Of a DNA stretch of 64,000 nucleotides, positions 7,524 through 19,821 are shown piece by piece. The notes under the pieces are model-generated. The model searched no databases and had not been told where the DNA came from. It saw nothing but the letters and a program-made list of their open reading frames with translations. Origin of the DNA: Adineta vaga (Eukaryota; Animalia; Rotifera); assembly GCA_021613535.1 (NCBI GenBank), contig CP075493.1, forward strand, positions 9,424,001 through 9,488,000, read 5' to 3'. Made by a program: the position numbers and the translations under genes. The number at the start of each line of letters is the position of its first letter. Within the stretch, counting starts at the first letter, position 1.

Positions 7524-8449
7524 ATTTTTATGATCTAAATTTTGATCTAAAAAACACACCACAAGTAGAAGTAGGTATTAATGCTAGGGAAAAAAGAGAG
7601 ATTTATATTATAAACAATACAAAATAATGATGAAGAAGGATTGGAATTATATTATTGGTAATTAAACAGAACAAATGATGGATTCATAAGTCTGATGAAC
7701 CACTCTTGGAAAATATTTATTTCATAGTTCTAAACATGATTGTATTTTAATAATAAAATATTCAAGAAAATAAAATAGATTAACGTACAAGGGAGGACAA
7801 ACAAACATCTGAAATTCAAAGATTCTATCGATAGAGTATGACATCTATCGTCGAAATTGTCATCACTATTTTATATTCAATACGGTCAATGACTTTTTCA
7901 TCATTTTCTTGAATATATATTGCGTCATGAACGAAAGATATCTTCAACAATAATTCGAAATACAACGAAACATTCTTCTTGTAAAGAGGAAAAGACCACA
8001 ATTGTTTATTCTCATTCGGAGAAAGAATGTTTAATACATTCAATAAAACTTGATAGAATAGATTTTTCTCTATTGAAATTTACAGGTAGAAATATTATTT
8101 TATGACAAGCATAAATCGGAAGTATTGGTCTTTCAAAATATTTTATAATATGACACATCGTAGTTATTTATTTGATATTATTGGAAATATCTGACAAAAA
8201 CTAGTAGTGTTACAATGATTCATAATGTCATCAGTAAAAATAAATATTGAATCACTCGTGTAACCTTCAGTAGATAAAACGCTACTTTTCAATTTCATTC
8301 TTAATCTTTTCGCGCTAATAAGAAGCTCACACCTGAAACAAACTGGAAACAGTGAATCGTATACGTATTGATTTTGTATACTAATAACGACTTATTGAAC
8401 AACTACAGGAGAAACCAATATATTCACTGCAGAATCCAATACAAATTTG

Positions 8450-9031
8450 ATGTCTGTGATTGCTGAAGATTGTCTGCTGCCACCTATTCTTTCTGATAAT
8501 CATCAATTATATCCATGGCGTGTGATAAGTAAAGGTTTAAACATTGAAGGCCCTTGTATAAATGCTGATTGTCTCGCTTATAATCAAATGGTAATTATCA
8601 ATATAGGCTTTGGTGAATATGATCTTTCACGTTTGATTCTTCAGCGACAAAATCGATGTTCTATGTGTGATCAGAAAATTCATCCAGTTCAATATGCTTT
8701 AAATCAATGTCAATGGTGGTATGTAGATCATTATAGTACTTGTACATATGCTTTACATACAGTTAATGATACTTATGAACTAAATGAAATGAAATGTGAA
8801 TATAGAATTATGGAAATCATGCCATTATCAACTATTTATTGTCGACCCATATCATCACCAGAACTAACATGTCCTATTTGCTTGAATACTGTTGGAAATG
8901 ATCATGAAATAATTTATCTTCGTTGTTCACATAGTTTCCATCGAGATTGTATCAATGAATGGTTAAAATCGAATCGATCAATGGCAAATACATGTCCAAT
9001 TTGTCGAGAATACATTGCAGAAAGATATTGA
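8450..9031 (+). CDS. Intronless RING-H2 finger protein with an N-terminal Cys-rich domain (putative E3 ligase)
   Basis: C-terminal CPIC..CSHSFHRDCINEW..CPIC fits C3H2C3; N-terminal WRVISKGLNIEGPCINADCLAYNQMVIINIG..CSMC. Confidence 0.85.
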   Translation: MSVIAEDCLLPPILSDNHQLYPWRVISKGLNIEGPCINADCLAYNQMVIINIGFGEYDLSRLILQRQNRCSMCDQKIHPVQYALNQCQWWYVDHYSTCTYALHTVNDTYELNEMKCEYRIMEIMPLSTIYCRPISSPELTCPICLNTVGNDHEIIYLRCSHSFHRDCINEWLKSNRSMANTCPICREYIAERY

Positions 9032-9511: not shown

Positions 9512-12500
9512 TCACCAAGCGATTTTTGCGGCAATACCTCGAGGGTATTTTCTAATACACCATTTTCTAAATTCATCAAGCAGTAGCCATAACATGCCAA
9601 ATCCTAGTGTTGGCATCACATATTTCACAGGCACTGGTGCCGTATGAAAAACACGATTGAACCAACCAATTTGAGTTACTAATATTTGAATAACGATTGA
9701 AATAAATATAGCACCAAAAGCGTACCAATTTCGTCCTTTACCCCAAAATGGATTATGTTGCAGAATCGATGTGTATCGAGTACGAGTAGCAAAATAATTG
9801 AAAAATTGAAACAAACAAACTGAACAATAATATATTGATTGAGCAACAAATGACATCTCTGTCAATTGTGCAACCGAATAGGGTGTCACAGGATCGATAC
9901 CAAATTTCTCATAAGTGAACATAAATGAATAGAATGGAACATGATTATCAATCCAATAATAACAGAAACAGAAGAAACCTGTAAAACATTCTAGATTACC
10001 AACAAACATGTAAGCATGAAAGAGTAGTTTTATGTTGAGTAAATGATCTTTTGATCGAATAGCAGGTGGACGAGACATGATATCACGTTCAGGTTTCTCT
10101 GTTACCATAGCCAGTGACAGAAACACATCTGTGAGATAAAACAAATAGGACTTTGTAGATAAAAGTAAATATACAATTCACACGATACATACCGTTGAGC
10201 ATACAAAATACAATAGCAAGGAAAGCAGATAACGCCAGAGGCATGCCAAACCATAAACTAAAAAATACTGGCCAAATTTGTGACCAAGAACCTAGAGACA
10301 AAGTGAAAACATTTCAAATAAACCAAAAAGAGACGATAATAAAGGTACCTCCAGGTAGAAGATAAACAGCAACTTTCTTCAAATTATCACTTAACAAACG
10401 ACCTGTTTCAATTCCTTGGATAATCGATGCAAAATTATTGTCTAACAATATCATATCACCAGCTTCTTTCGATACTTCAGTTCCCGATTGCATTGCAACA
10501 CCAAGATGAGCACATTTCAATGCAGGTGCATCATTTGTACCATCACCTGTCACTGCAACAATCTCAGCACGTCGTTGAAACTCACTGACAATACGAAGCT
10601 TTTGTTCTGGTGTTGTTCGTGCAAAGACTAGTTCTTGATGTGATAATACCCAGTCCCACATGAAATCGTCCATATAATTGATATCAGCACCAGCAACAAC
10701 AATTGCATATGGAATATATTCCATTTTGTCCGTTGGTTCGATGTCAGTTTCTGGTTCTTTGAATTGATTTCGAATCGATTGCCATGCACGACGATACCAT
10801 GGCAAAACTTCAGGAACGATTTCACCAGCCGCAATTGATGCTCGTCGCTGTATTTCACGTGCATTTTTTGACAACGAATCGGTTCGTTTGACTTCGCCTG
10901 GTTCATGTTGTTGGATGAGTTTGTCATTTCGATAAAGATTGAGCATGGATTTTCCGTTTGCATCTCTTTCAAGTTTGAATGTGTCGACTCCGTTCATGTC
11001 AGCGATTTCCGGTGTGAGAATGTTAACTTGTTTTGCGATGGCTTTGGCAGTTGTTGGATGATCACCAGTGACCATGGCAACTCGAATGTGAGCTTGTCGA
11101 GCTTTGATGACAGCGTCGGGTACTTCGGGTCGTGGTGGGTCGAGTAATGAAAAGAGACCGATGAAACAATAATTGTTGGAAGCGAAACCATTAAAATCTT
11201 CATCTTGACCGGAAGGATTTGCACGTTGTTGATCTTTATATTTTTGCATCATAGTATCATATTCTTCACGTGTGTATCGTAATTGACACATAGCAATAAC
11301 ACGATACCCGTTCTTACCTAATATTTCTTGTCGACTAAATAATGTCTTCTTCATCTCATTATCTAATGGAACAATCTCATTAGTACTTTTTTTATATGTT
11401 GAACAGCGTTGAATGATAATATCTGGTGCACCTTTCATTGTTACTAGAACAGTGCGATCTTTTTCGGATTTCGAACCATCTAATATCTCCAATTGATTAG
11501 CGGTAATCATAAATTTATTTGTTGAATTAAATGGTAAAACTTTCAAACGTGGATTAATATTTCGTACTTTCTCAATATGAACAGAGCATTGATCCGCACA
11601 AAGATTATACAGAGCAGTATCAGCTGCATCCCCGACAAGCTGTAGCTTTGATTTCGTTTCTACATTATCATGATCTAATTCAATATCTTTAACGGTTCGT
11701 TTTTCAGCATTATTACAGAGTACAGCACCAAGTAAAAGGTCACGAAATGGTTGAATTGTAATATCATTTGGTTTTTCATCTTCCTCAACTTTTTCAGCAA
11801 TTTTATCGACCAAAGGCATCCGTTCCGATTCATCACGACTGCCCGTAGATAGTTTACGTACGAATTCCATTGTACTATCAGAAAGACGACGAACTAAATT
11901 GATAGCATCAGTGGATATACGACGTAATACGTGAAAAACACTATTTTCTTCTTCTTCAAGTTTTCGTTTTGACAGTGGTGCTTTGTAAACTCCATCAATA
12001 TCCCATAAGAGATGTGTAACAGTCATTTTATTTTGTGTTAATGTGCCAGTTTTATCGGTAGCAATTACAGAAACAGCATTGAATGTTTCAACTATTTGTA
12101 AACTTTTCACTAACACACGTTGTCGATACATTTGCTGAGCAACAACAGTTAATGCTAATCAAGGAAAATGAAAGAATATACTATATCGTGTAGAATACTG
12201 TCTATTCATGCTCGATAGGAACTGAAAAAATAATATATAAATCTATTCTCTCTTACCTAATGTAACAGCCGATGGTAAACCCATTGGTAAAAATGCAACG
12301 ATCATACCAATAGAATTTACAATGTTCGCATTGAAAGTGACAAATCCATGATGCGTACGATTTAACCATACTGCCCATGTTATCCATAGAATTATAATGG
12401 CTACAATGGTGGAAAGAACCACAAACAGTACGAATCGATTCACTTCACGATGTAGACCTGTCACTTCATCACCTGAACTTCCACGCGTTAATTTCGACAT

Positions 12501-13367
12501 CTTTCCCAACACTGTATTGTCACCAATTGCAATCACTACAGCTTCACCTGTTCCTTGTTCAACCATTGTCGAGTAAAATCCTATGTTTGTTGATTCCATA
12601 AATGTGGCACTGCTACATCGAATTGTGATTGAAACTGGTTTTGATTCACCTGTCAACTCGGATGTATTTACCTAACATAAACAAACAAACGAATAACAGT
12701 CAAGTGAAAAGGTAGCGGAAAGATGAGTGTGCATTACTTTGAGACCATCACAAGCAATGAATCGACAATCAGCAGGTAGTTTATCACCCATTCGAATGAG
12801 AATAATATCACCTGGAACGAGTTCATCTGTGACAACTTGTTGTTCTCGTCCATCTCGTCGAACAGTTGCGAGAGTTGGTAGGAGTTTAGAAAATGCGGCG
12901 ACAATTTTGATTGATTTGAGTTGTTGATAAACATTCAGAATTGAATTGCAAGTAATGACAATAAATATAACGATGCTTAATGCTAGATTTGACTTGGAAG
13001 ATTTTGAATCACCTAAAGGTTTATATGCAAGAAAGGCGAGAATACCTGCAAACCAGAGAATACTATTGAATCCTGAAAATAATTGTTTTAGGAGAAGTAA
13101 AAAATAGTTTGGTGGATCAGGAGGTGTAAGTTTATTATCGCCATAATAATAATGGGCCTCGGCTACGATATCAGTAGACAGGCCGGTTTTCGGATCGGTT
13201 TGAAAACGATCATAGAGTTCGTCAAGAGGAATCGTATGGAGATCCTGTTCAGATGAGGATTTTTCGTTTGAGGACCATAATGTAACGTTGGAATCTTTTG
13301 GGATAGACACTTGTTCCTTAGTATTATTATCGGATTTCAGATCGCTTTGAAAACTTGCATTATCCAT
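9512..13367 (-). CDS. P-type ATPase, P2C (Na+/K+, H+/K+)-like scaffold, copy 1; atypical cation site
   Basis: TGES, DKTGTLTQN, KGAPD, DPPR, MVTGDHPTTAKAIA, FARTTPEQK and TGDGTNDAPAL all intact; exons joined across short GT-AG introns; M4 reads AFLPMGLP. Confidence 0.95.
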
Positions 13368-16003
13368 TGTGAAGAATAAAATCAGAACGTAACTTTTCTT
13401 TGATTCATTTTGAAAAATTATAAATAAATGTAGTATACAATTAGATGTACCATGATAATACAATCATATTTAGAAATATTCTGAAACAATTAGAATTCAA
13501 AATAAGCAAACAATATGATTGTCAATATTATTATCTTTCATCGTCAATTTCTCAATGCAAAATTGAAAAAGAAAACTTTTGAAGAAGTTAGCAATATAAA
13601 GAGCAATTTGTTTACACTATCCATTCGTTTAAAGATTCTATGGTTAAAGCAATACAACATAAAAATAAATGATTGTACAAGAAAACGTGTTCACCGTGCG
13701 ATGCGTTCTGCTTGATTGCATTCATATAAGCGTAATGTCAAAATGGTTTGCTTATATTAGTCAACGAAAATAATATTCGAAATAAATATGTAGATGCCTC
13801 TCAAATCCTGTTCTTTGAAAAAGTCATTTTTGCAAGATTGATTTTGAATTAAAAAAGAAACAACATTAAATAATACTGAATCAATTTTTATCATTAGTTA
13901 TTTTTTCTTGTAAATACTTCCTTATCGATTTTATATATTCTCGAAATTCTTTATTTAATTATTTCATTATTATATGTATCGTACTGTTCTGGGCATGCTA
14001 CGGTTTTTTAAAAATATCTTTCAGTGACTGTGAATGTAAGAATGTGAATGGCCTAGCCGCACTCTTACGACCGTACTCTACTGAAAGGGATAATTCAGGA
14101 AAATACTGTCACATATTTAATATAATATTCTATATGAAGTTAAGGGAAAGTGCAAGATTTTCTAGAAGACAGACAATCAAATAGATCAACCCAAGATATT
14201 TCTTGTTTAACGCAAAATTAATTATGAATAAAATTATTAATATAATTGCTATACACTTCAAAGATGTAAAATATAAAGCATGATGACTAATAATACAGTT
14301 ATAATATGATATAATCGAATCGAGTAAAATTCTTGTAAATACATTTAACAAACATTCAATCATGATCAAATATATCGAATAATTGTACAGAAAAATACTT
14401 AGATTTGTTCGAATAAGCCATTTTGTTTTTGCTTTGATCATATAAAGAACATATTGCATTGTTTACACCATTTCTAGAGAGAAGAAAAAATGACTGACAT
14501 GCCCGACAATAACAGATGAAAGGATCGTAACTGTACAATTTTTTCTAGCTTCTTTTTCTCAATGATAGAAAAGGAAAGGAATACTTCAAAACGAAAATCA
14601 CGTTTTTCTGTCAATGTAAGTAGAAAAAAAACGGTTGAATTTTCTCCAATAATATCTATTTCACAGCCATACAATGACCTATTAAAATTCTTTCTGAATA
14701 AAAATAACCGAATTGATTTTCAGACTGGAATCATAGGTGTCTCAATCTACGGATAGATGAAGGTACATCTACATCCATACTTTTTGAAGACATTCTAATG
14801 ATGGTTAGTTCAATGTATAGGTCAAAATTTCAAATGGCAAGTCTTCCGGCGATTTTAACTCTCGATTAACACGACATATACTGAACTGTTCTTTTTCTGA
14901 CTAATTCTTTACAAATCTAGTGCTAGCGAACAGATCCAGATGAACCGTGTATCTGATAATATTTGTTTTATACTGATTTCTATTCATTAGATAAAATCAC
15001 TTCATCAAATTGATTAATCATTGGAAATGTGTAATGTTGAAGATTTTTGCATAGACTTCGTACAGTAGGCAATTACTCGATTTGAAATATGTTTCATTCT
15101 ATATGTTCATATCATTTTGTTTCCCGTCTAGAATTTGAGGACAGTTGTATGAATGACCATTTAATCGATCATTTCGATTTCGATATTCGTCGCGAAAACT
15201 TCAAATATAGCTCTCATTATCTATCAGTTCTGATAGAAAACACTTATTGTAAACATTTCCAGTGGATAAATATAATACTACAGCCGTAAGATATTTAGCT
15301 TGAAAGAGCTTTTATAACAACACTTAGTATCAAACAAAATGTTGTTTCTTTGTGAGTGATATGTTAAAGTATTGTTTTCGGATAGACTAGTTTGATATAT
15401 GGAAATATTCGAATAATTACAAAGTTTAACAAAAGAAAGATGAATCTCTCAAATGTACATTGGTGAGATTACTGATGTCATTAATATGTATAAGATTCGA
15501 TCAGTTTCTTAATTGGATTATTTTATATTATTATAAATAATTCTTGATCAGTTTTTCACACTCTTGTTATGGACAAATGCAATAAATATGATGCTATGTC
15601 AGCTTTGAGCATATAACCCATGATTTTGAACTTGAAATATCATGGAATAAGTTTCAATAAAGAAAGATTTTTCATAGTTCTAATCTTGATGTAGAGTTTT
15701 ATTCATTCTAATCATTGTCGGTCATTTTCATGAGTGTGGATTGAATTCAAGTCTAATTCATTTTAAAACTTTGTTTTTACATCGAATATAATTGATTTAC
15801 AATATTCCTACTAAACACAAACTTTATTATATTGATTTAATGAATATGATTATATTTGGAAGATACTTAGAAGAACTGAAGAAAAAATGCACAAAGAAAG
15901 AATCACAATAATACAAAAAATTCAAGTGGATACATATTTCGTTGTAATACCGCACCAGTCGATTTTCTTCAAGTATGTATCTTGACAATATATCGAACTT
16001 CTT

Positions 16004-19000
16004 TTACCAAGCGGTTCTTGCGGCAATACCTCGAGGGTATTTTCTAATACACCATTTTCTAAATTCATCAAGCAGTAGCCATAACATGCCAAATCCTAGT
16101 GTTGGCATCACATATTTCACAGGCACTGGTCCTGTTTGAAAAACACGATTGAACCAACCAACTTGAGTTATAAGCAATTGAACACCAGCAGATATGATCA
16201 TCGCAGCAAAAACATACCAATTTCGTCCTTTACCCCACAATGGATTATGTTGTAGAATCGATGTGTATCGGGTACGAGTAGCAAAATAGTTGAAAAATTG
16301 AAACAAACAAACTGAACAATAATACACTGATTGAGAAACAAATGACATCTCTGTCAATTGTGCAACCGAATAGGGTGTCACAGGATCGATACCAAAGTTT
16401 TCAAAAGTGAACATAAATGAATAGAATGGAACATGATTATCAATCCAATAATAACAGAAACAGAAGAAGCCAGTAAAACATTCTAGATTACCAACAAACA
16501 TGTAAGCATGAAAGAGTAGTTTTATGTTGAGTAAGTGATCTTTTGAGCGAATAGCAGGTGGACGAGACATGATATCACGTTCAGGTTTCTCTGTTACCAT
16601 AGCCAGTGACATAAAAACATCTATAACAAGCATGATAATGATCGAAGTCTAGGGAAATTCAAACATACCATTAACCATACAAAAAATTGTTGCCAAGAAA
16701 GCAGTCAATGCTAGAGGCATACCAAACCAGAGATTGAAGAAAACAGGCCAAATTTGTGACCAAGAACCTAGCATACAAGAAATAATAAAAGGATTCAAGA
16801 TTTGTTCTTTAATAATTTAATTACCTCCAGGTAGAAGATAAACAGCAACTTTCTTCAAATTATCACTTAACAAACGACCTGTTTCAATGGCTTGAATGAT
16901 CGATGCAAAATTATTGTCTAACAATATCATATCACCAGCTTCTTTCGATACTTCAGTTCCCGATTGCATTGCAACACCAAGATGAGCACATTTCAATGCA
17001 GGTGCATCATTTGTACCATCACCTGTCACTGCAACAATTTCAGCACGTCGTTGAAACTCACTGACAATACGAAGCTTTTGTTCTGGTGTTGTTCGTGCAA
17101 AGACTAGTTCTTGATGTGATAATACCCAGTCCCACATGAAATCGTCCATATAATTGATATCAGCACCAGCAACAACAATTGCATATGGAATATATTCCAT
17201 TTTGTCAGTTGGTTCGATGTCAGTATCTGGCTCTTTGAATTGATTTCGAATCGATTGCCATGCACGACGATACCATGGCAAAACTTCAGGAACAATTTCA
17301 CCAGCTGCAATTGATGCTCGTCGCTGTATCTCACGTGCATTTTTCGACAACGAATCGGTTCGTTTGACTTCGCCCGGTTCATGTTGTTGAATGAGTTTGT
17401 CATTTCGATAAAGATTGAGCATAGATTTTCCGTTTGCATCTCTTTCAAGTTTGAATGTGTCGACGCCGTTCATGTCAGCGATTTCCGGTGTGAGAATGTT
17501 AACTTGTTTAGCGATGGCTTTGGCAGTTGTTGGATGATCACCAGTGACCATGGCAACTCGAATTTGAGCTCGTCGAGCTTTGATGACAGCGTCAGGTACT
17601 TCGGGTCGTGGTGGATCGAGTAATGAAAAGAGACCGATGAAACAGTAATTGTTGGAAGCGAAACCATTAAGATCTTCACCTTGACCGGAAGGATTTGCAC
17701 GTTGTTGATCTTTATATTTTTGCATCATAGTATCATATTCTTCACGTGTGTATCGTGATTGACACATAGCAATAACACGATACCCATTCTTACCTAATTC
17801 TTCTTGTCGTTTGAATAATGTATTCTTCATCTCGGCATCTAGTGGCGAAATATCGTCATTATTCATTTTATATGTTGAACAGCGTTGAATGATAATATCT
17901 GGTGCACCTTTTAACATTACTAAGACAGTTCGATCTCGTTCTGGTACGGAGGAATCTAGTGTTTCAAGTTGATTTGCTGTAATCATAAATTTATTAGCTG
18001 AATTAAATGGCAATGCTTTCAAACGTGGATTGACACTACGAACTCTTTCAATATCAACAAAGCATCGGTCAACACAAAGATTGTATAATGCTGTATCGGC
18101 TGCATCTCCAACAACACGTAATTCAGATTTCATTTCTGAAATATCTTGACCAATTTGTGCATCCTGTACGAGTTGTTTTTCAGCATTATTACAGAGTGCA
18201 GCACCGAGCAACAGATCACGAAACGCTTGAATTTGTACTTCACTTGCTTCATTAGGTATGTTATTTTTGTCATTATCGTCGCTTAAAGACGGCATTCGTT
18301 GTGGTTGATTGATATTTCCCGACGATAACTTTCGCACCATTGTTGAGCACCAACAGACAAACGACGAGCTGTATCAATAACACCTGATGAAAGTCGACGA
18401 ATTGTTTGAATAATCGACTCTGGTTGGGCTGGTTCAGAATGAGGTAATGGTACCTTGTAAATACCTTGTGTATCCCATAACAGATGAGTAATAGTCATTT
18501 TATTTTGTGTTAATGTACCAGTTTTATCAGTAGCAATTACAGAAACAGCATTGAATGTTTCAACTATTTGTAAACTTTTGACTAACACACGTTGTCGATA
18601 CATTTGTTTAGCAACAATAGTCAATACTGAAACGAAATAAATACAAGAAAAGTTAATAATTCACATAGATATGATTAATTTTTATTTACCAAGAGTTACG
18701 GCAGATGGTAGACCTACTGGTAAAAAACCAACAATCATACCGATTGAATTAATGATATTTGCATTATATGTAACGAATCCAGAATGGTCACGATTCAACC
18801 ATGCTGCCCATGTTATCCATAGAATTATAATGGCTACAATGGTGGAAAGAACCACAAACAGTACGAATCGATTCACTTCACGATGTAGACCTGTCACTTC
18901 ATCACCTGAACTTCCACGCGTTAATTTCGACATCTTTCCCAACACTGTATTGTCACCAATTGCAATCACTACAGCTTCACCTGTTCCTTGTTCAACCATT

Positions 19001-19821
19001 GTCGAGTAAAATCCTATGTTTGTTGATTCCATAAATGTGGCACTGCTACATCGAATTGTGGTTGAGACTGGTTTTGATTCACCTGTCAACTCGGATGTAT
19101 TTACCTAACATAAACAAATAAATAAACAAACAAACGAATGACAGTCAAGTGAAAAGGTAGCGGAAAGATGAGTGTGCATTACTTTGAGACCATCACAAGC
19201 AATGAATCGACAATCAGCAGGTAGTTTATCACCCATTCGAATGAGAATAATGTCACCTGGAACGAGTTCATCTGTGACAACTTGTTGTTCTCGTCCATCT
19301 CGTCGAACAGTTGCGAGAGTTGGTAGGAGTTTAGAAAATGCGGCGACAATCTTGATTGATTTGAGTTGTTGATAAACATTCAAAATTGAATTGCAAATGA
19401 TGACCAACATAAGTACAACACCCAAGGCCAAGTTTGATATCGATGGATTTGGTTCACCAAATGGTTTATAGGCAAGAAAAGCGAGAATACCTGCAATCCA
19501 AAGAATATTATTGAATCCCATAAACAATTCTTTAAATAGTAGCCAAGTATAAGTTGGCTTTTTTGGTGGTGTAAGTTTATTAGCACCATACTCAGCACGA
19601 GCGTCTTGTACATAACTGCTAGATAAACCAGTACGGGGTTCCGTATGAAAACGCTTGTAAAGATCATCAAGTGGAATAATATGGACATCTTGTTCTAGAC
19701 GAGATTTATCAACAGTAGCCCATAGATCAACAGTTGAATCTTGTCTTGTTTTTGAGTGTTCTCCATTCGGAGCAATAATATGCACCGAAGGTTCATCATG
19801 TTGCAAGGCACGATTATCCAT
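16004..19821 (-). CDS. P-type ATPase, P2C-like scaffold, copy 2 (tandem paralogue); one apparent 1-nt frameshift near 18342
   Basis: Same motifs and intron positions as copy 1; M4 reads GFLPVGLP; ORFs 18283..18624 and 16817..18340 join if one A is restored in gctcaa[a]caatggtg. Confidence 0.93.

What the first reader, a model, noticed from the sequence alone, without database searches (positions are those of the whole stretch)
9512..19821. Pair of Na/K-type-scaffold P-ATPases whose ion site looks rebuilt into a proton-pump-like site (PMGL/PVGL)
Seen: both paralogues keep every catalytic motif (TGES, DKTGT, TGD, GDGxND). The M4 PEGL glutamate is replaced by Met (ATG at 12282-12284) in one copy and Val (GTA at 18715-18717) in the other, so this is not a single read error. 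The M5 acidic position reads SWSQ in both, M6 has one Asp (CMLND/CMVND), and M2 has Asn (CNSILNVYQ). Established: PEGL Glu and the M5 Glu bind cations in P2 pumps; fungal P3A H+-ATPase Pma1 has PVGL in M4 and relies on a single M6 Asp paired with an M2 Asn; P4 flippases also carry a hydrophobic residue here (PISL). Inference: these may be P2C-derived pumps that converged on H+ transport, or on another non-Na/K substrate, in an animal. Caveat: I see no equivalent of the P3A M5 Arg.
Basis: partly seen in the sequence, partly recalled or inferred. Interest (0 to 1): 0.9.

Follow-up and report, generated by a model that had tools for sequence, protein, structure and literature searches.

The report
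Rotifer pumps with single-acid ion site
Two neighbouring, expressed genes of the rotifer Adineta vaga encode ATP-driven membrane pumps related to the sodium pump, in which all but one of the acidic residues that normally hold the ions have been replaced, so they must carry something other than the usual 3 Na+/2 K+; what they carry is still unknown.

Summary
Two tandem minus-strand genes, A (9512-13367) and B (16004-19821), keep TGES, DKTGT, TGD and GDGTND. They read PMGL/PVGL in M4, SWSQ in M5 and CMLND/CMVND in M6.

They are not true Na,K-ATPase alpha orthologues. They belong to a bdelloid-only expansion (13 loci in A. vaga) inside a non-canonical sister clade of P2C, whose named members are fungi and an amoeba. 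In bdelloids the M4 Glu was lost once. The M5 Glu became Gln in the subgroup that includes this window. That subgroup is conserved in Adineta, Rotaria and Didymodactylos.

Both genes are transcribed and spliced. dN/dS is 0.14-0.31 overall and 0.04-0.10 in the membrane exons of copy A against L017. A frameshift in copy B is absent from every laid contig that covers the site, two RNA-type runs and one DNA-type run.

The proton-pump reading is only partly supported. M4 and M6 resemble P3A pumps, but the M5 built-in cation is missing, the P3A family score fails, ENA sodium pumps also lack the M4 Glu, and this genome already has genuine P3A pumps.

My best reading is a single-site pump exchanging one monovalent cation for one proton. 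The scan noted this stretch, and the P3A pumps, before.

The parts
9512..13367 (-). Copy A, complete gene (5 exons, 1188 codons, PMGL). It is the fast-evolving, apparently less abundant tandem copy.
   Evidence: Splice sites read. Pfam Cation_ATPase_N, E1-E2_ATPase, Cation_ATPase, Hydrolase and Cation_ATPase_C on the exons. Intron 1 is spliced out in an RNA-type contig, and an A-specific exon 1 contig is present in X1 and X10. Copy A has 69 unique changes against 4 in copy B.
12738..13367 (-). A exon 1: N-terminus, M1, M2 and the start of the A domain. The M2 Asn codon is AAT at 12947-12945.
12257..12671 (-). A exon 2: TGES, M3 and M4. The M4 Met codon is ATG at 12284-12282 (PMGL).
10349..12154 (-). 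A exon 3: end of M4, DKTGT, N and P domains, TGD, GDGTND and the start of M5.
11847..11924 (-). Insert after DKTGT with three kinase-type motifs (RRIS, RRLS, RKLS). Found in the window's subgroup and absent from the PEGL group; groups III and outgroups were not scanned.
10193..10291 (-). A exon 4: M5 (GSWSQ, Gln codon 10280-10278) and M6 up to CMLN (Asn codon 10196-10194). The first base of the Asp codon is 10193.
9512..10128 (-). A exon 5: the rest of the M6 Asp codon (10128-10127), M7-M10 and the stop codon. M8 reads QFFNY (Asn in place of Asp926) and the C-terminus is ...KIAW.
16004..19821 (-). Copy B, complete gene (5 exons, PVGL). It is the slowly evolving copy and lies on the deeper RNA-type contigs.
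   Evidence: Read. Introns 3 and 4 are spliced in X1, X10 and X5. Nearest relatives are A. steineri P0166 and P0162.
19183..19821 (-). B exon 1. The M2 Asn codon is at 19392-19390.
18690..19104 (-). B exon 2. The M4 Val codon is GTA at 18717-18715 (PVGL).
16825..18626 (-). B exon 3.
18345..18346 (-). One base is missing from this assembly in B exon 3, which shifts the frame. RNA-type contigs X1 and X10 insert C after 18345, and DNA-type contigs X8 insert T after 18346. Either base restores the frame, giving ...RRLSVGAATMVRKLS... or ...GASTM...
   Evidence: table 4. No spliced joint is seen across 18329-18381 (table 5).
16669..16767 (-). B exon 4: GSWSQ (Gln codon 16756-16754) and CMVN (Asn codon 16672-16670).
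16004..16620 (-). B exon 5: M6 Asp (the codon is completed by 16620-16619), M7-M10 and the stop codon.
10349..11354 (-). The 3' half of A exon 3 is 92-100% identical in DNA to the matching part of B (about 16825-17830), while the 5' half is 53-77% identical. This is a likely gene-conversion tract.

Best explanation
Both genes encode working P-type ATPases of a bdelloid-specific subfamily inside a non-canonical, beta-subunit-independent sister clade of the Na,K/H,K pumps.

The ancestral site of that clade had three carboxylates: M4 Glu, M5 Glu and M6 Asp. In this subfamily it has been reduced to the M6 Asp alone. That Asp is surrounded by amide and hydroxyl oxygens: M5 Ser and Gln, M6 Asn, M8 Asn.

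Shown: gene structure, intact catalytic motifs, transcription and splicing, purifying selection that is strongest on the membrane exons, conservation across three bdelloid genera, and the residue equivalences.

Inferred: the enzymes still run the E1/E2 phosphorylation cycle, but with one charge-compensated site. They therefore cannot perform 3Na+/2K+ exchange. No Lys, Arg or His sits in M5 to act as a built-in counter-ion, so the return half-cycle should need a counter-transported ion. The mechanism I consider most likely is that the single Asp alternately carries one monovalent cation and one proton, a 1:1 cation/H+ exchange pump. The direction (H+ out with K+ in, or Na+ out with H+ in) is unresolved. 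The group-specific triple RRxS insert next to the phosphorylation site suggests control by a kinase.
For: - Scaffold: the best solved relatives are Na,K- and H,K-ATPase alpha chains (E = 2e-81 for exon 3; 1.5e-156 for the full-length orthologue P0166). The best NCBIfam model is IIC.
- Site: the alignment to 2zxe gives V/M, G, S, Q, C, N, D at Glu327, Ser775, Asn776, Glu779, Asp804, Thr807 and Asp808. M8 Asp926 is Asn and the M9 Glu is absent.
- Rarity: among 186 relatives carrying both motifs, this signature occurs in eleven proteins, ten named bdelloid and one unnamed ENA contig.
- Order of changes: the M2 Asn and the M6 Thr-to-Asn change arose on the bdelloid stem. M4 Glu became Val once (SH-aLRT 99). 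M5 Glu became Gln later.
- Function: all catalytic motifs are intact in the four A. vaga loci of the subgroup. dN/dS is 0.14-0.18 against the ohnologue L017 and the other-species locus L016, and 0.31 between A and B. The membrane exons of copy A against L017 give 0.09, 0.04 and 0.10.
- Expression: spliced contigs without intergenic cover come from three studies.
- Counter-ion logic: P3A, P1B-2 and P4 pumps use a built-in M5 cation instead of counter-transport (PMC10654040; PMC5387105). No such residue is present here.
Against: - No ion flux, ATPase activity or localisation is known for any member of the whole non-canonical clade, so the ion identity is inference from ligands only.
- Copy A evolves much faster than copy B (69 vs 4 unique changes) and lies on much shallower RNA-type contigs, so it may be drifting.
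- The family contains decaying members: A. steineri P0267 without the catalytic Asp, and A. vaga L020 and L021 with TGER/TGET.
- Na,K-ATPase mutants with neutral residues at Glu327 or Glu779 are reported to keep some function (from memory, not checked here), so loss of these two residues alone need not change specificity completely.
- Expression rests on assembled contigs whose RNA status is inferred from splicing, not on raw stranded reads.
Confidence: 0.4

Rival explanations
1. Convergent P3A-like electrogenic proton pump. One H+ per ATP is carried on the M6 Asp (paired with the M2 or M6 Asn) and released outside, with no counter-ion.
For: - The M4 residue is hydrophobic, as in P3A pumps. 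BLASTP puts the group's PVGL on the PIAM of A. vaga's own P3A pump.
- M6 reads Asn-Asp, as in AHA2 Asn683-Asp684 (PMC5387105) and in the A. vaga P3A pump (ILNDGT).
- Only one membrane carboxylate remains.
- The M2 Asn lies 7 residues before the YQ(E/Q) anchor, as AHA2 Asn106 lies 7 residues before Glu113 (PMC5387105).
Against: - The M5 position equivalent to AHA2 Arg655 (His701 in yeast Pma1) is Gln. AHA2 R655A and R655D do not complement (PMC5387105).
- TIGR01647 scores 299 bits against a cut-off of 615.5, while IIC scores 628.
- The M2 Asn and M6 Asn are also present in the PEGL/SWSE paralogues.
- BLASTP does not cover the M2 Asn position, and its local alignment is offset by 3 residues from the anchor-based one.
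- The isosteric Glu-to-Gln change keeps an oxygen ligand.
- The genome has at least four or five genuine P3A loci.
Confidence: 0.2
2. Single-site alkali-cation efflux pump that works like fungal ENA (P2D). Na+ or K+ is bound by the M6 Asp plus neutral oxygens and exported without obligatory counter-transport.
For: - ENA pumps are proven Na+/K+ exporters. They have a conserved IPAS motif (Ala at the PEGL Glu position) and use M5 Glu, Asn and Gln with an M6 Asp. The A343E mutant works less well (PMC10779151).
- The pocket here offers Ser, Gln, Asn, Asp and Asn oxygens.
- The M4 Glu is often replaced across uncharacterised P2C-like pumps (Q, T, S, C, N, M).
Against: - ENA keeps an M5 Glu that is essential (E818V is dead, PMC10779151). 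Here it is Gln.
- The TIGR01523 (IID) score is 268 bits against a cut-off of 645.
- No rationale is known for Na+ export in a freshwater or limno-terrestrial animal beyond desiccation stress.
Confidence: 0.2
3. Non-transporting or decaying copies. The ion site is degenerate, and the proteins are pseudo-pumps, regulators or genes on the way to loss.
For: - Two cation ligands have been lost.
- Copy A is accelerated.
- This assembly has a frameshift in copy B.
- Relatives with destroyed catalytic motifs exist (P0267, L020, L021).
Against: - The frameshift is absent from every laid contig that covers the site, two RNA-type runs and one DNA-type run.
- All catalytic motifs are kept in every complete subgroup model checked, across three genera.
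- The membrane exons have the lowest dN/dS, 0.04-0.10.
- Both genes are spliced and expressed.
Confidence: 0.08
4. Pump for a bulky or organic cation (a polyamine-like substrate, for example), by analogy with P4 (PISL) and P5B (PPALP) pumps, which have a hydrophobic residue at this M4 position.
For: M4 is hydrophobic. M5 is rich in aromatic residues (SWSQIWPVFF). A single Asp and a Gln remain. The analogy itself is from memory of the P5B literature.
Against: The aromatic M5 motif is shared by the whole non-canonical clade, including members with PEGL and SWSE. TIGR01657 (P5) and TIGR01652 (P4) score only 169 and 103 bits. No P4- or P5-type extra helices or subunits were seen.
Confidence: 0.05

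Closest known systems
Na,K-ATPase and H,K-ATPase alpha subunits (canonical P2C; for example shark 2zxe, pig alpha1, ATP4A, ATP12A)
   Same: They are the best solved relatives over the whole length. The domain order and all catalytic motifs match, the P-domain shows high local identity (TGDHPxTAKAIAK, VFARTxPxQKL, VAVTGDGxNDxPAL), and the M6 Asp808 equivalent is kept.
   Different: - The window's genes sit in a separate clade in the tree.
- The full-length orthologue is below the TIGR01106 cut-off (628 vs 946 bits).
- Glu327 is V/M, Ser775 is G, Asn776 is S, Glu779 is Q, Asp804 is C, Thr807 is N and Asp926 is N.
- There is no M9 Glu, no SYGQ beta-subunit motif and no C-terminal YY.
- M5 is one residue longer.
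- There are two large inserts, one after DKTGT and one in the P domain.
Fungal type IIC 'NK/PAT' ATPases and other non-canonical P2C-like pumps (Racocetra, chytrids, Colletotrichum 'Na,H/K antiporter P-type ATPase', Mastigamoeba)
   Same: They share the large clade with the window's genes. They also share the M5 YLLPxGSWSE-type motif with the extra residue, M6 with Cys/Ser at Asp804, M8 Q..N, and a C-terminus ending in ...AW. They are the nearest named non-rotifer hits.
   Different: Identity is only 31-36%. The fungal proteins keep the M5 Glu and the M6 Thr-Asp, and mostly keep the M4 Glu. The bdelloid family is a separate lineage whose nearest kin are unnamed, intron-poor eukaryotes from metagenomes. 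The function of the fungal pumps is itself barely known (PMC7588218).
P3A plasma-membrane H+-ATPases (AHA2, Pma1, and A. vaga's own copies at C2:11.24 Mb and elsewhere)
   Same: The residue at the PEGL Glu position is hydrophobic. M6 reads Asn-Asp, as in plant-type P3A pumps. There is a single transport carboxylate, and possibly an M2 Asn (PMC5387105).
   Different: There is no M5 Arg or His. The family model fails (299 vs 615.5 bits). The phylogenetic origin is P2C-like. BLASTP finds no M5-M6 similarity.
ENA (P2D) Na+/K+ efflux ATPases
   Same: This is a P2 pump family whose M4 lacks the Glu (IPAS) and that still moves alkali cations. M5 Gln and M6 Asp act as ligands (PMC10779151).
   Different: ENA keeps an essential M5 Glu and a TM7 Asp. 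The IID model scores 268 bits against a cut-off of 645. The clade is different.

Membership tests
P-type (E1-E2) ATPase superfamily | The catalytic motifs TGES, DKTGT, TGD and GDGxND, and the Pfam domain set | tested here: met
   All four motifs are present in both copies. PF00690, PF00122, PF13246, PF00702 and PF00689 lie on the exons.
Canonical P2C (Na,K/H,K-ATPase alpha, TIGR01106) | The whole protein scores above NCBIfam's curated cut-off | tested here: not met
   The full-length orthologue P0166 scores 628.3 bits against a cut-off of 946.1. It is still the best model by far. The window's own exons were scored separately (328, 61 and 57 bits), not joined.
Canonical P2C (Na,K/H,K-ATPase alpha, TIGR01106) | The cation ligands Glu327, Glu779, Asp804, Asp808 and Asp926 | tested here: not met
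   Only the Asp808 equivalent is kept. The others are V/M, Q, C and N.
Canonical P2C (Na,K/H,K-ATPase alpha, TIGR01106) | The beta-subunit contact motif SYGQ in the M7-M8 loop, and the C-terminal YY | tested here: not met
   The loop reads GIDPVTPYSVAQL and the C-terminus ends ...IAW. ATP12A in the same alignment has SYGQ and ...YY.
Canonical P2C (Na,K/H,K-ATPase alpha, TIGR01106) | Placement inside the clade that holds animal Na,K/H,K pumps | tested here: not met
   In a FastTree of 136 rows the window falls in the other of two large clades (local support 99 each). That tree is fast and midpoint-rooted.
Non-canonical P2C-like clade (fungal NK/PAT type and relatives) | Tree placement plus the shared motifs: M5 LLPxGSWS(E) with one extra residue, no Asp804, M8 Q..N, C-terminus ...AW | tested here: met
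   The clade has no curated model, and identity to the fungal proteins is only 31-36%.
Bdelloid subgroup with M4 V/M and M5 Gln | The signature V/M-G-S-Q-C-N-D, the triple RRxS insert, and monophyly with Adineta, Rotaria and Didymodactylos proteins | tested here: met
   The tree is an IQ-TREE quick search with SH-aLRT support of 96-100 on the relevant branches.
P3A H+-ATPase (TIGR01647) | The whole protein scores above the curated cut-off | tested here: not met
   299.4 bits against a cut-off of 615.5. The genome's real P3A gene gives 512 + 276 bits on two exons.
P3A H+-ATPase (TIGR01647) | A hydrophobic residue at the M4 position of the PEGL Glu | tested here: met
   BLASTP aligns LPVGL with LPIAM of the A. 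vaga P3A pump.
P3A H+-ATPase (TIGR01647) | A single M6 Asp as proton acceptor (AHA2 Asp684, overlapping SERCA Asp800) | tested here: met
   The Asp808/Asp800 equivalent is kept and preceded by Asn, as in AHA2 Asn683-Asp684 (PMC5387105).
P3A H+-ATPase (TIGR01647) | A built-in M5 cation (AHA2 Arg655; His701 in yeast Pma1), at the position of SERCA Glu771 | tested here: not met
   That position is Gln, and there is no Lys, Arg or His in M5 (PMC5387105).
P3A H+-ATPase (TIGR01647) | An M2 Asn pairing with the Asp (AHA2 Asn106) | tested here: inconclusive
   An Asn lies 7 residues before the YQ(E/Q) anchor, as Asn106 lies before Glu113. But BLASTP's alignment is offset by 3 residues and does not cover it. 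The Asn is also present in the PEGL paralogues. No coordinates were available to measure a pair.
ENA / P2D (TIGR01523) | The whole protein scores above the cut-off, and the essential M5 Glu is present | tested here: not met
   267.7 bits against a cut-off of 645.05. The M5 Glu is replaced by Gln.

The most novel reading that the evidence does not exclude
Bdelloid rotifers turned a Na/K-pump-like (P2C-like) scaffold step by step into a proton-carrying pump: first the M2 Asn and the M6 Asn-Asp, then a hydrophobic M4, then the M5 Glu to Gln. That would be an independent, animal-born route to P-type H+ transport (electrogenic or H+/K+), working beside horizontally acquired true P3A pumps.
Probability: 0.2. 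Interest if true: 0.85.

Novelty: new variant of a known kind. Interest (0 to 1): 0.6.

Why it matters
Ion specificity in P2 pumps is thought to be set by a handful of carboxylates in M4, M5, M6 and M8. This is a natural series within one animal genome: 13 loci carrying three, two or one carboxylate on the same scaffold. The one-carboxylate form is conserved across three bdelloid genera, expressed and under constraint. Characterising it would show what a P2C-type machine does with a single acidic ligand, and whether a built-in counter-ion is really needed for proton pumping. It would also open an uncharacterised clade of pumps found in fungi, amoebae and rotifers. For rotifer biology, it adds to an unusual set of membrane energisers (canonical Na/K pumps, true P3A proton pumps and this family) in animals that survive desiccation and ion-poor water.

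Tried and rejected
1. Copy B as a pseudogene. The assembly has a frameshift near 18345, but contigs from X1 and X10 (RNA-type) and X8 (DNA-type) each carry one extra base that restores the frame.
2. A 53-base intron (18381-18329) to rescue B's frame. No joint is seen there, and the RNA-type contigs run straight through (tables 5 and 8).
3. Membership of P3A, P2D, P2A, P2B, P4 or P5. All NCBIfam scores are far below the cut-offs.
4. Membership of canonical P2C. It fails on the cut-off, the ligands, the beta-subunit motif and the tree.
5. Naming the sister lineages. The listing of cluster members gave no names. Their contigs are intron-poor eukaryotic DNA from metagenomes. A WASH-7 neighbour gene has no close named kin. 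So horizontal or vertical origin stays open.
6. Literature on bdelloid P-type ATPases or on this substitution. Nothing relevant was found.
7. BLASTP of the P3A M5-M6 piece against the orthologue. No alignment resulted, so those equivalences rest on published superpositions.
8. Structure prediction was not run. The tools return no coordinates, so the Asp-Asn geometry could not be measured.
Exons were used one by one by reference, and the database orthologue P0166 served as the full-length stand-in.

Full report
**What is there.** The window is G000:C1:9424001-9488000 of a 100.8-Mb, six-contig genome. Database hits on contigs of the same lengths are labelled Adineta vaga. Two tandem genes lie on the minus strand. 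I read the splice sites directly from the sequence.
- Copy A has exons 13367-12738, 12671-12257, 12154-10349, 10291-10193 and 10128-9512. That gives 1188 codons in an open frame.
- Copy B has exons 19821-19183, 19104-18690, 18626-16825, 16767-16669 and 16620-16004.
- The exons carry the usual Pfam set of cation P-ATPases.
- Both copies have LTGES, ATDKTGT, MVTGDHP and TGDGTND.
ATG at 12284-12282 gives PMGL and GTA at 18717-18715 gives PVGL. M5 is GSWSQ in both. M6 is CMLN|D and CMVN|D, with the Asp codon split by an intron. M2 is CNSILNVYQQ.

I did not build or submit a joined protein from the window's exons. Exons were searched one by one by reference. The A. steineri orthologue P0166 served as the full-length stand-in; by tblastn it is 75-81% identical to copy B.

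**Residue equivalences.** The best solved relatives are Na,K- and H,K-ATPase alpha chains (E = 2e-81 for exon 3; 1.5e-156 for P0166).
- The HMMER alignment to shark Na,K-ATPase puts V on the PEGL Glu, G/S on Ser775/Asn776, Q on Glu779, C on Asp804, N on Thr807 and D on Asp808.
- A MAFFT alignment of the C-terminal part shows Asn in place of Asp926, no M9 Glu, no SYGQ motif in the M7-M8 loop, and a C-terminus ending ...IAW instead of ...YY.
- The M6 Asp is therefore the only survivor among the residues aligned to the canonical acidic ligands.

**Which family.**
- A search of 1.84 billion cluster representatives with exon 3, followed by a 136-row FastTree, splits the relatives into two large clades. 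One holds the canonical pumps. The other, which holds the window, has an M5 motif of the type YLLPAGSWSE (one residue longer), Cys or Ser at Asp804 and Asn at Asp926.
- Named members of this second clade are fungi (Racocetra, Thoreauomyces, Spinellus, Didymella, Termitomyces), the amoeba Mastigamoeba, the monogonont rotifer Brachionus, and many bdelloid proteins.
- Hits of 31-36% identity annotated as Colletotrichum 'Na,H/K antiporter P-type ATPase' point the same way. They correspond to the little-studied fungal type IIC NK/PAT pumps (PMC7588218).
- NCBIfam agrees. IIC is the best model, but at 628 bits it is below its cut-off of 946. P3A scores 299 against 615.5, and IID scores 268 against 645.

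**The bdelloid family.**
- A. vaga has 13 loci.
  - Four have PEGL with (S/T)WSE.
  - Four have PVGL with SWSE.
  - One has PFNL with TWSE.
  - Four have a hydrophobic M4 with SWSQ. These are A, B, L017 on contig C4 (probably the ohnologue of the A/B locus) and L027 on contig C3.
- An IQ-TREE of 42 rows (quick search) makes the bdelloid family monophyletic (support 100). It has a PEGL clade and a hydrophobic-M4 clade (support 99).
- The M4 Glu was lost once inside bdelloids. The M5 Glu/Gln state needs three changes on the tree.
- The window's subgroup includes A. steineri, A. ricciae, four Rotaria species or isolates (which read PMGL) and Didymodactylos (which has both PVGL and PMGL).
- Among 186 relatives carrying both motifs, the signature V/M-G-S-Q-C-N-D occurs in eleven proteins, ten named bdelloid and one unnamed ENA contig (P0183).
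- The M2 Asn and the M6 Thr-to-Asn change are shared by all bdelloid groups and absent from the outgroups. The changes therefore accumulated stepwise.
- The M4 Glu is also replaced in many other uncharacterised relatives: PMGM in Mastigamoeba, PTGL in a sister lineage, and a PQGL clade.

**Are the genes alive?**
- Nei-Gojobori dN/dS, summed exon by exon, is 0.31 for A against B. It is 0.17 and 0.18 for A against L017 and L016, and 0.14 and 0.15 for B. L016 is an orthologous locus from another bdelloid in a metagenome.
- For copy A against L017, the membrane exons give 0.09, 0.04 and 0.10.
- Contigs of four public runs were laid on 12401-18400.
  - X8 covers most of the intergenic DNA and shows no joints, so it behaves as DNA.
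  - X1, X10 and X5 come from three studies. They leave the intergenic stretch uncovered and carry exact GT..AG joints for B introns 3 and 4. X1 also carries the joint for A intron 1. These runs behave as RNA.
  - A contig specific to the divergent part of A exon 1 is present in X1 and X10, at much lower contig depth than B. Contig depth is a poor measure of expression.
- The assembly's copy B is out of frame near 18345. X1 and X10 insert a C there and X8 inserts a T. Either base restores the frame and gives ...RRLSVGA(A/S)TMVRKLS..., which matches the orthologues. No joint supports an alternative 53-base intron.
- The frameshift is thus absent from every laid contig that covers the site, in two RNA-type and one DNA-type run, and looks like an assembly or haplotype artefact.
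- Copy A is the fast copy. At sites invariant in four Adineta orthologues it has 69 unique changes against 4 in B (p = 2e-16).
- The 3' half of exon 3 is 92-100% identical between A and B in DNA, against 53-77% for the 5' half, so it was probably homogenised by gene conversion.

**How it may work.** The following points are shown:
- The catalytic machinery is intact.
- The membrane domain is under constraint.
- One carboxylate remains, surrounded by Ser, Gln, Asn and Asn oxygens.
- M5 has no Lys, Arg or His.

The inference follows from these. With a single charge-compensated site the pumps cannot do 3Na+/2K+ exchange. P-type pumps that need no counter-transport have a built-in positive residue in M5 (PMC10654040). 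In AHA2 this is Arg655, at the position of SERCA Glu771 (PMC5387105). Here that position is Gln. I therefore favour a cycle in which the Asp alternately carries one monovalent cation and one proton, with the direction open (confidence about 0.4).

**The proton-pump reading.** Several resemblances are real.
- BLASTP aligns PVGL with the PIAM of A. vaga's own P3A pump.
- M6 Asn-Asp matches AHA2 Asn683-Asp684.
- An M2 Asn lies at the same distance from the helix-end anchor as AHA2 Asn106.

The weaknesses are as follows.
- The missing M5 cation is a defining failure.
- The two Asn residues are also present in the PEGL paralogues.
- ENA sodium pumps show that a non-acidic M4 residue (IPAS) is compatible with alkali-cation transport (PMC10779151).
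- The genome has genuine P3A pumps on four contigs. One on C2 reads LINATIGYIE, LPIAM, TIRII and ILNDGTIMTISKD.

I give the electrogenic P3A-like pump about 0.2, an ENA-like alkali exporter about 0.2, a dead or decaying protein under 0.1, and an organic-cation pump about 0.05.

**Origin.**
- The best non-rotifer matches are unnamed eukaryote contigs from metagenomes, followed by fungi (about 640 bits). The best non-rotifer animal hit scores 488 bits.
- The sister lineages sit on intron-poor contigs that carry WASH-complex genes and have no close named kin.
It does not decide between transfer and loss in other animals.

**Verdict.** This is a new variant of a known kind of pump: conserved, expressed, and with an ion site not seen in any characterised P2 ATPase. 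Its substrate is open.

Noticed in passing
G000 C2:11237586-11241983 (L036); also C5:5.10 Mb (two tandem loci, L037 and L038), C1:8.56 Mb (L039) and C4:3.886 Mb: A. vaga carries genuine P3A plasma-membrane H+-ATPase genes. TIGR01647 exon hits score 512 + 276 bits at one locus. The motifs are LINATIGYIE (M2 Asn), LPIAM (M4), TIRII (M5 Arg) and ILNDGTIMTISKD (M6). This is unusual for an animal, and two first-stage findings of this scan also noted it.
   Followed up: partly
window 11847-11924 (copy A) and the matching part of copy B around 18330-18400: A group-specific insert right after DKTGT carries three RRxS/RKLS kinase-type motifs. It is conserved in Adineta, Rotaria and Didymodactylos orthologues and absent from the PEGL paralogues. 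It may be a regulatory phosphorylation cluster.
   Followed up: partly
window 18345-18346: This assembly lacks one base in copy B. RNA-type contigs (+C) and DNA-type contigs (+T) both restore the frame with different bases. That suggests two intact alleles and a consensus error at a heterozygous site.
   Followed up: yes
window 10349-11354 vs about 16825-17830: The 3' half of exon 3 is 92-100% identical in DNA between the tandem copies, while the 5' half is 53-77% identical. This looks like a gene-conversion tract.
   Followed up: partly
P0267 (A. steineri); L020 (C6:1.09 Mb) and L021 (C3:2.91 Mb) of A. vaga: Some family members have lost catalytic residues. P0267 reads GKTGT instead of DKTGT, TGEK, and has no GDGxND. 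L020 reads TGER and L021 reads TGET. The family shows birth and death of copies, or pseudo-enzymes.
   Followed up: no
L028 (ENA ERZ25067493 contig, 126.8 kb) and L029 (ERZ25067825): The nearest non-bdelloid relatives of the family lie on intron-poor eukaryotic contigs from metagenomes. Neighbouring genes include a WASH-7-type (SWIP, WASH complex subunit 7) gene, Laminin_G_3 genes and an NRPS-like gene. No closely related named organism was found.
   Followed up: partly
window 17238-17255 and 18018-18035: Very deep RNA-type contigs (depth up to 4352) share only these short stretches with copy B and then run on unlike it. They probably come from another, highly expressed P-ATPase paralogue that shares conserved motif words.
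   Followed up: no
window 8447-9031 (+): An ORF with a C-terminal RING-H2-like zinc finger (CPICL...CSHSFHRDCINEWL...CPICR) lies just beyond the 3' end of copy A.
   Followed up: no
G000 C6:1.47 Mb, C3:11.51 Mb, C6:3.49 Mb, C4:0.72 Mb (L030-L033): Loci 53-63% identical to a canonical Na,K-ATPase alpha also exist in the genome. The non-canonical family is therefore additional to them and does not replace them.
   Followed up: no
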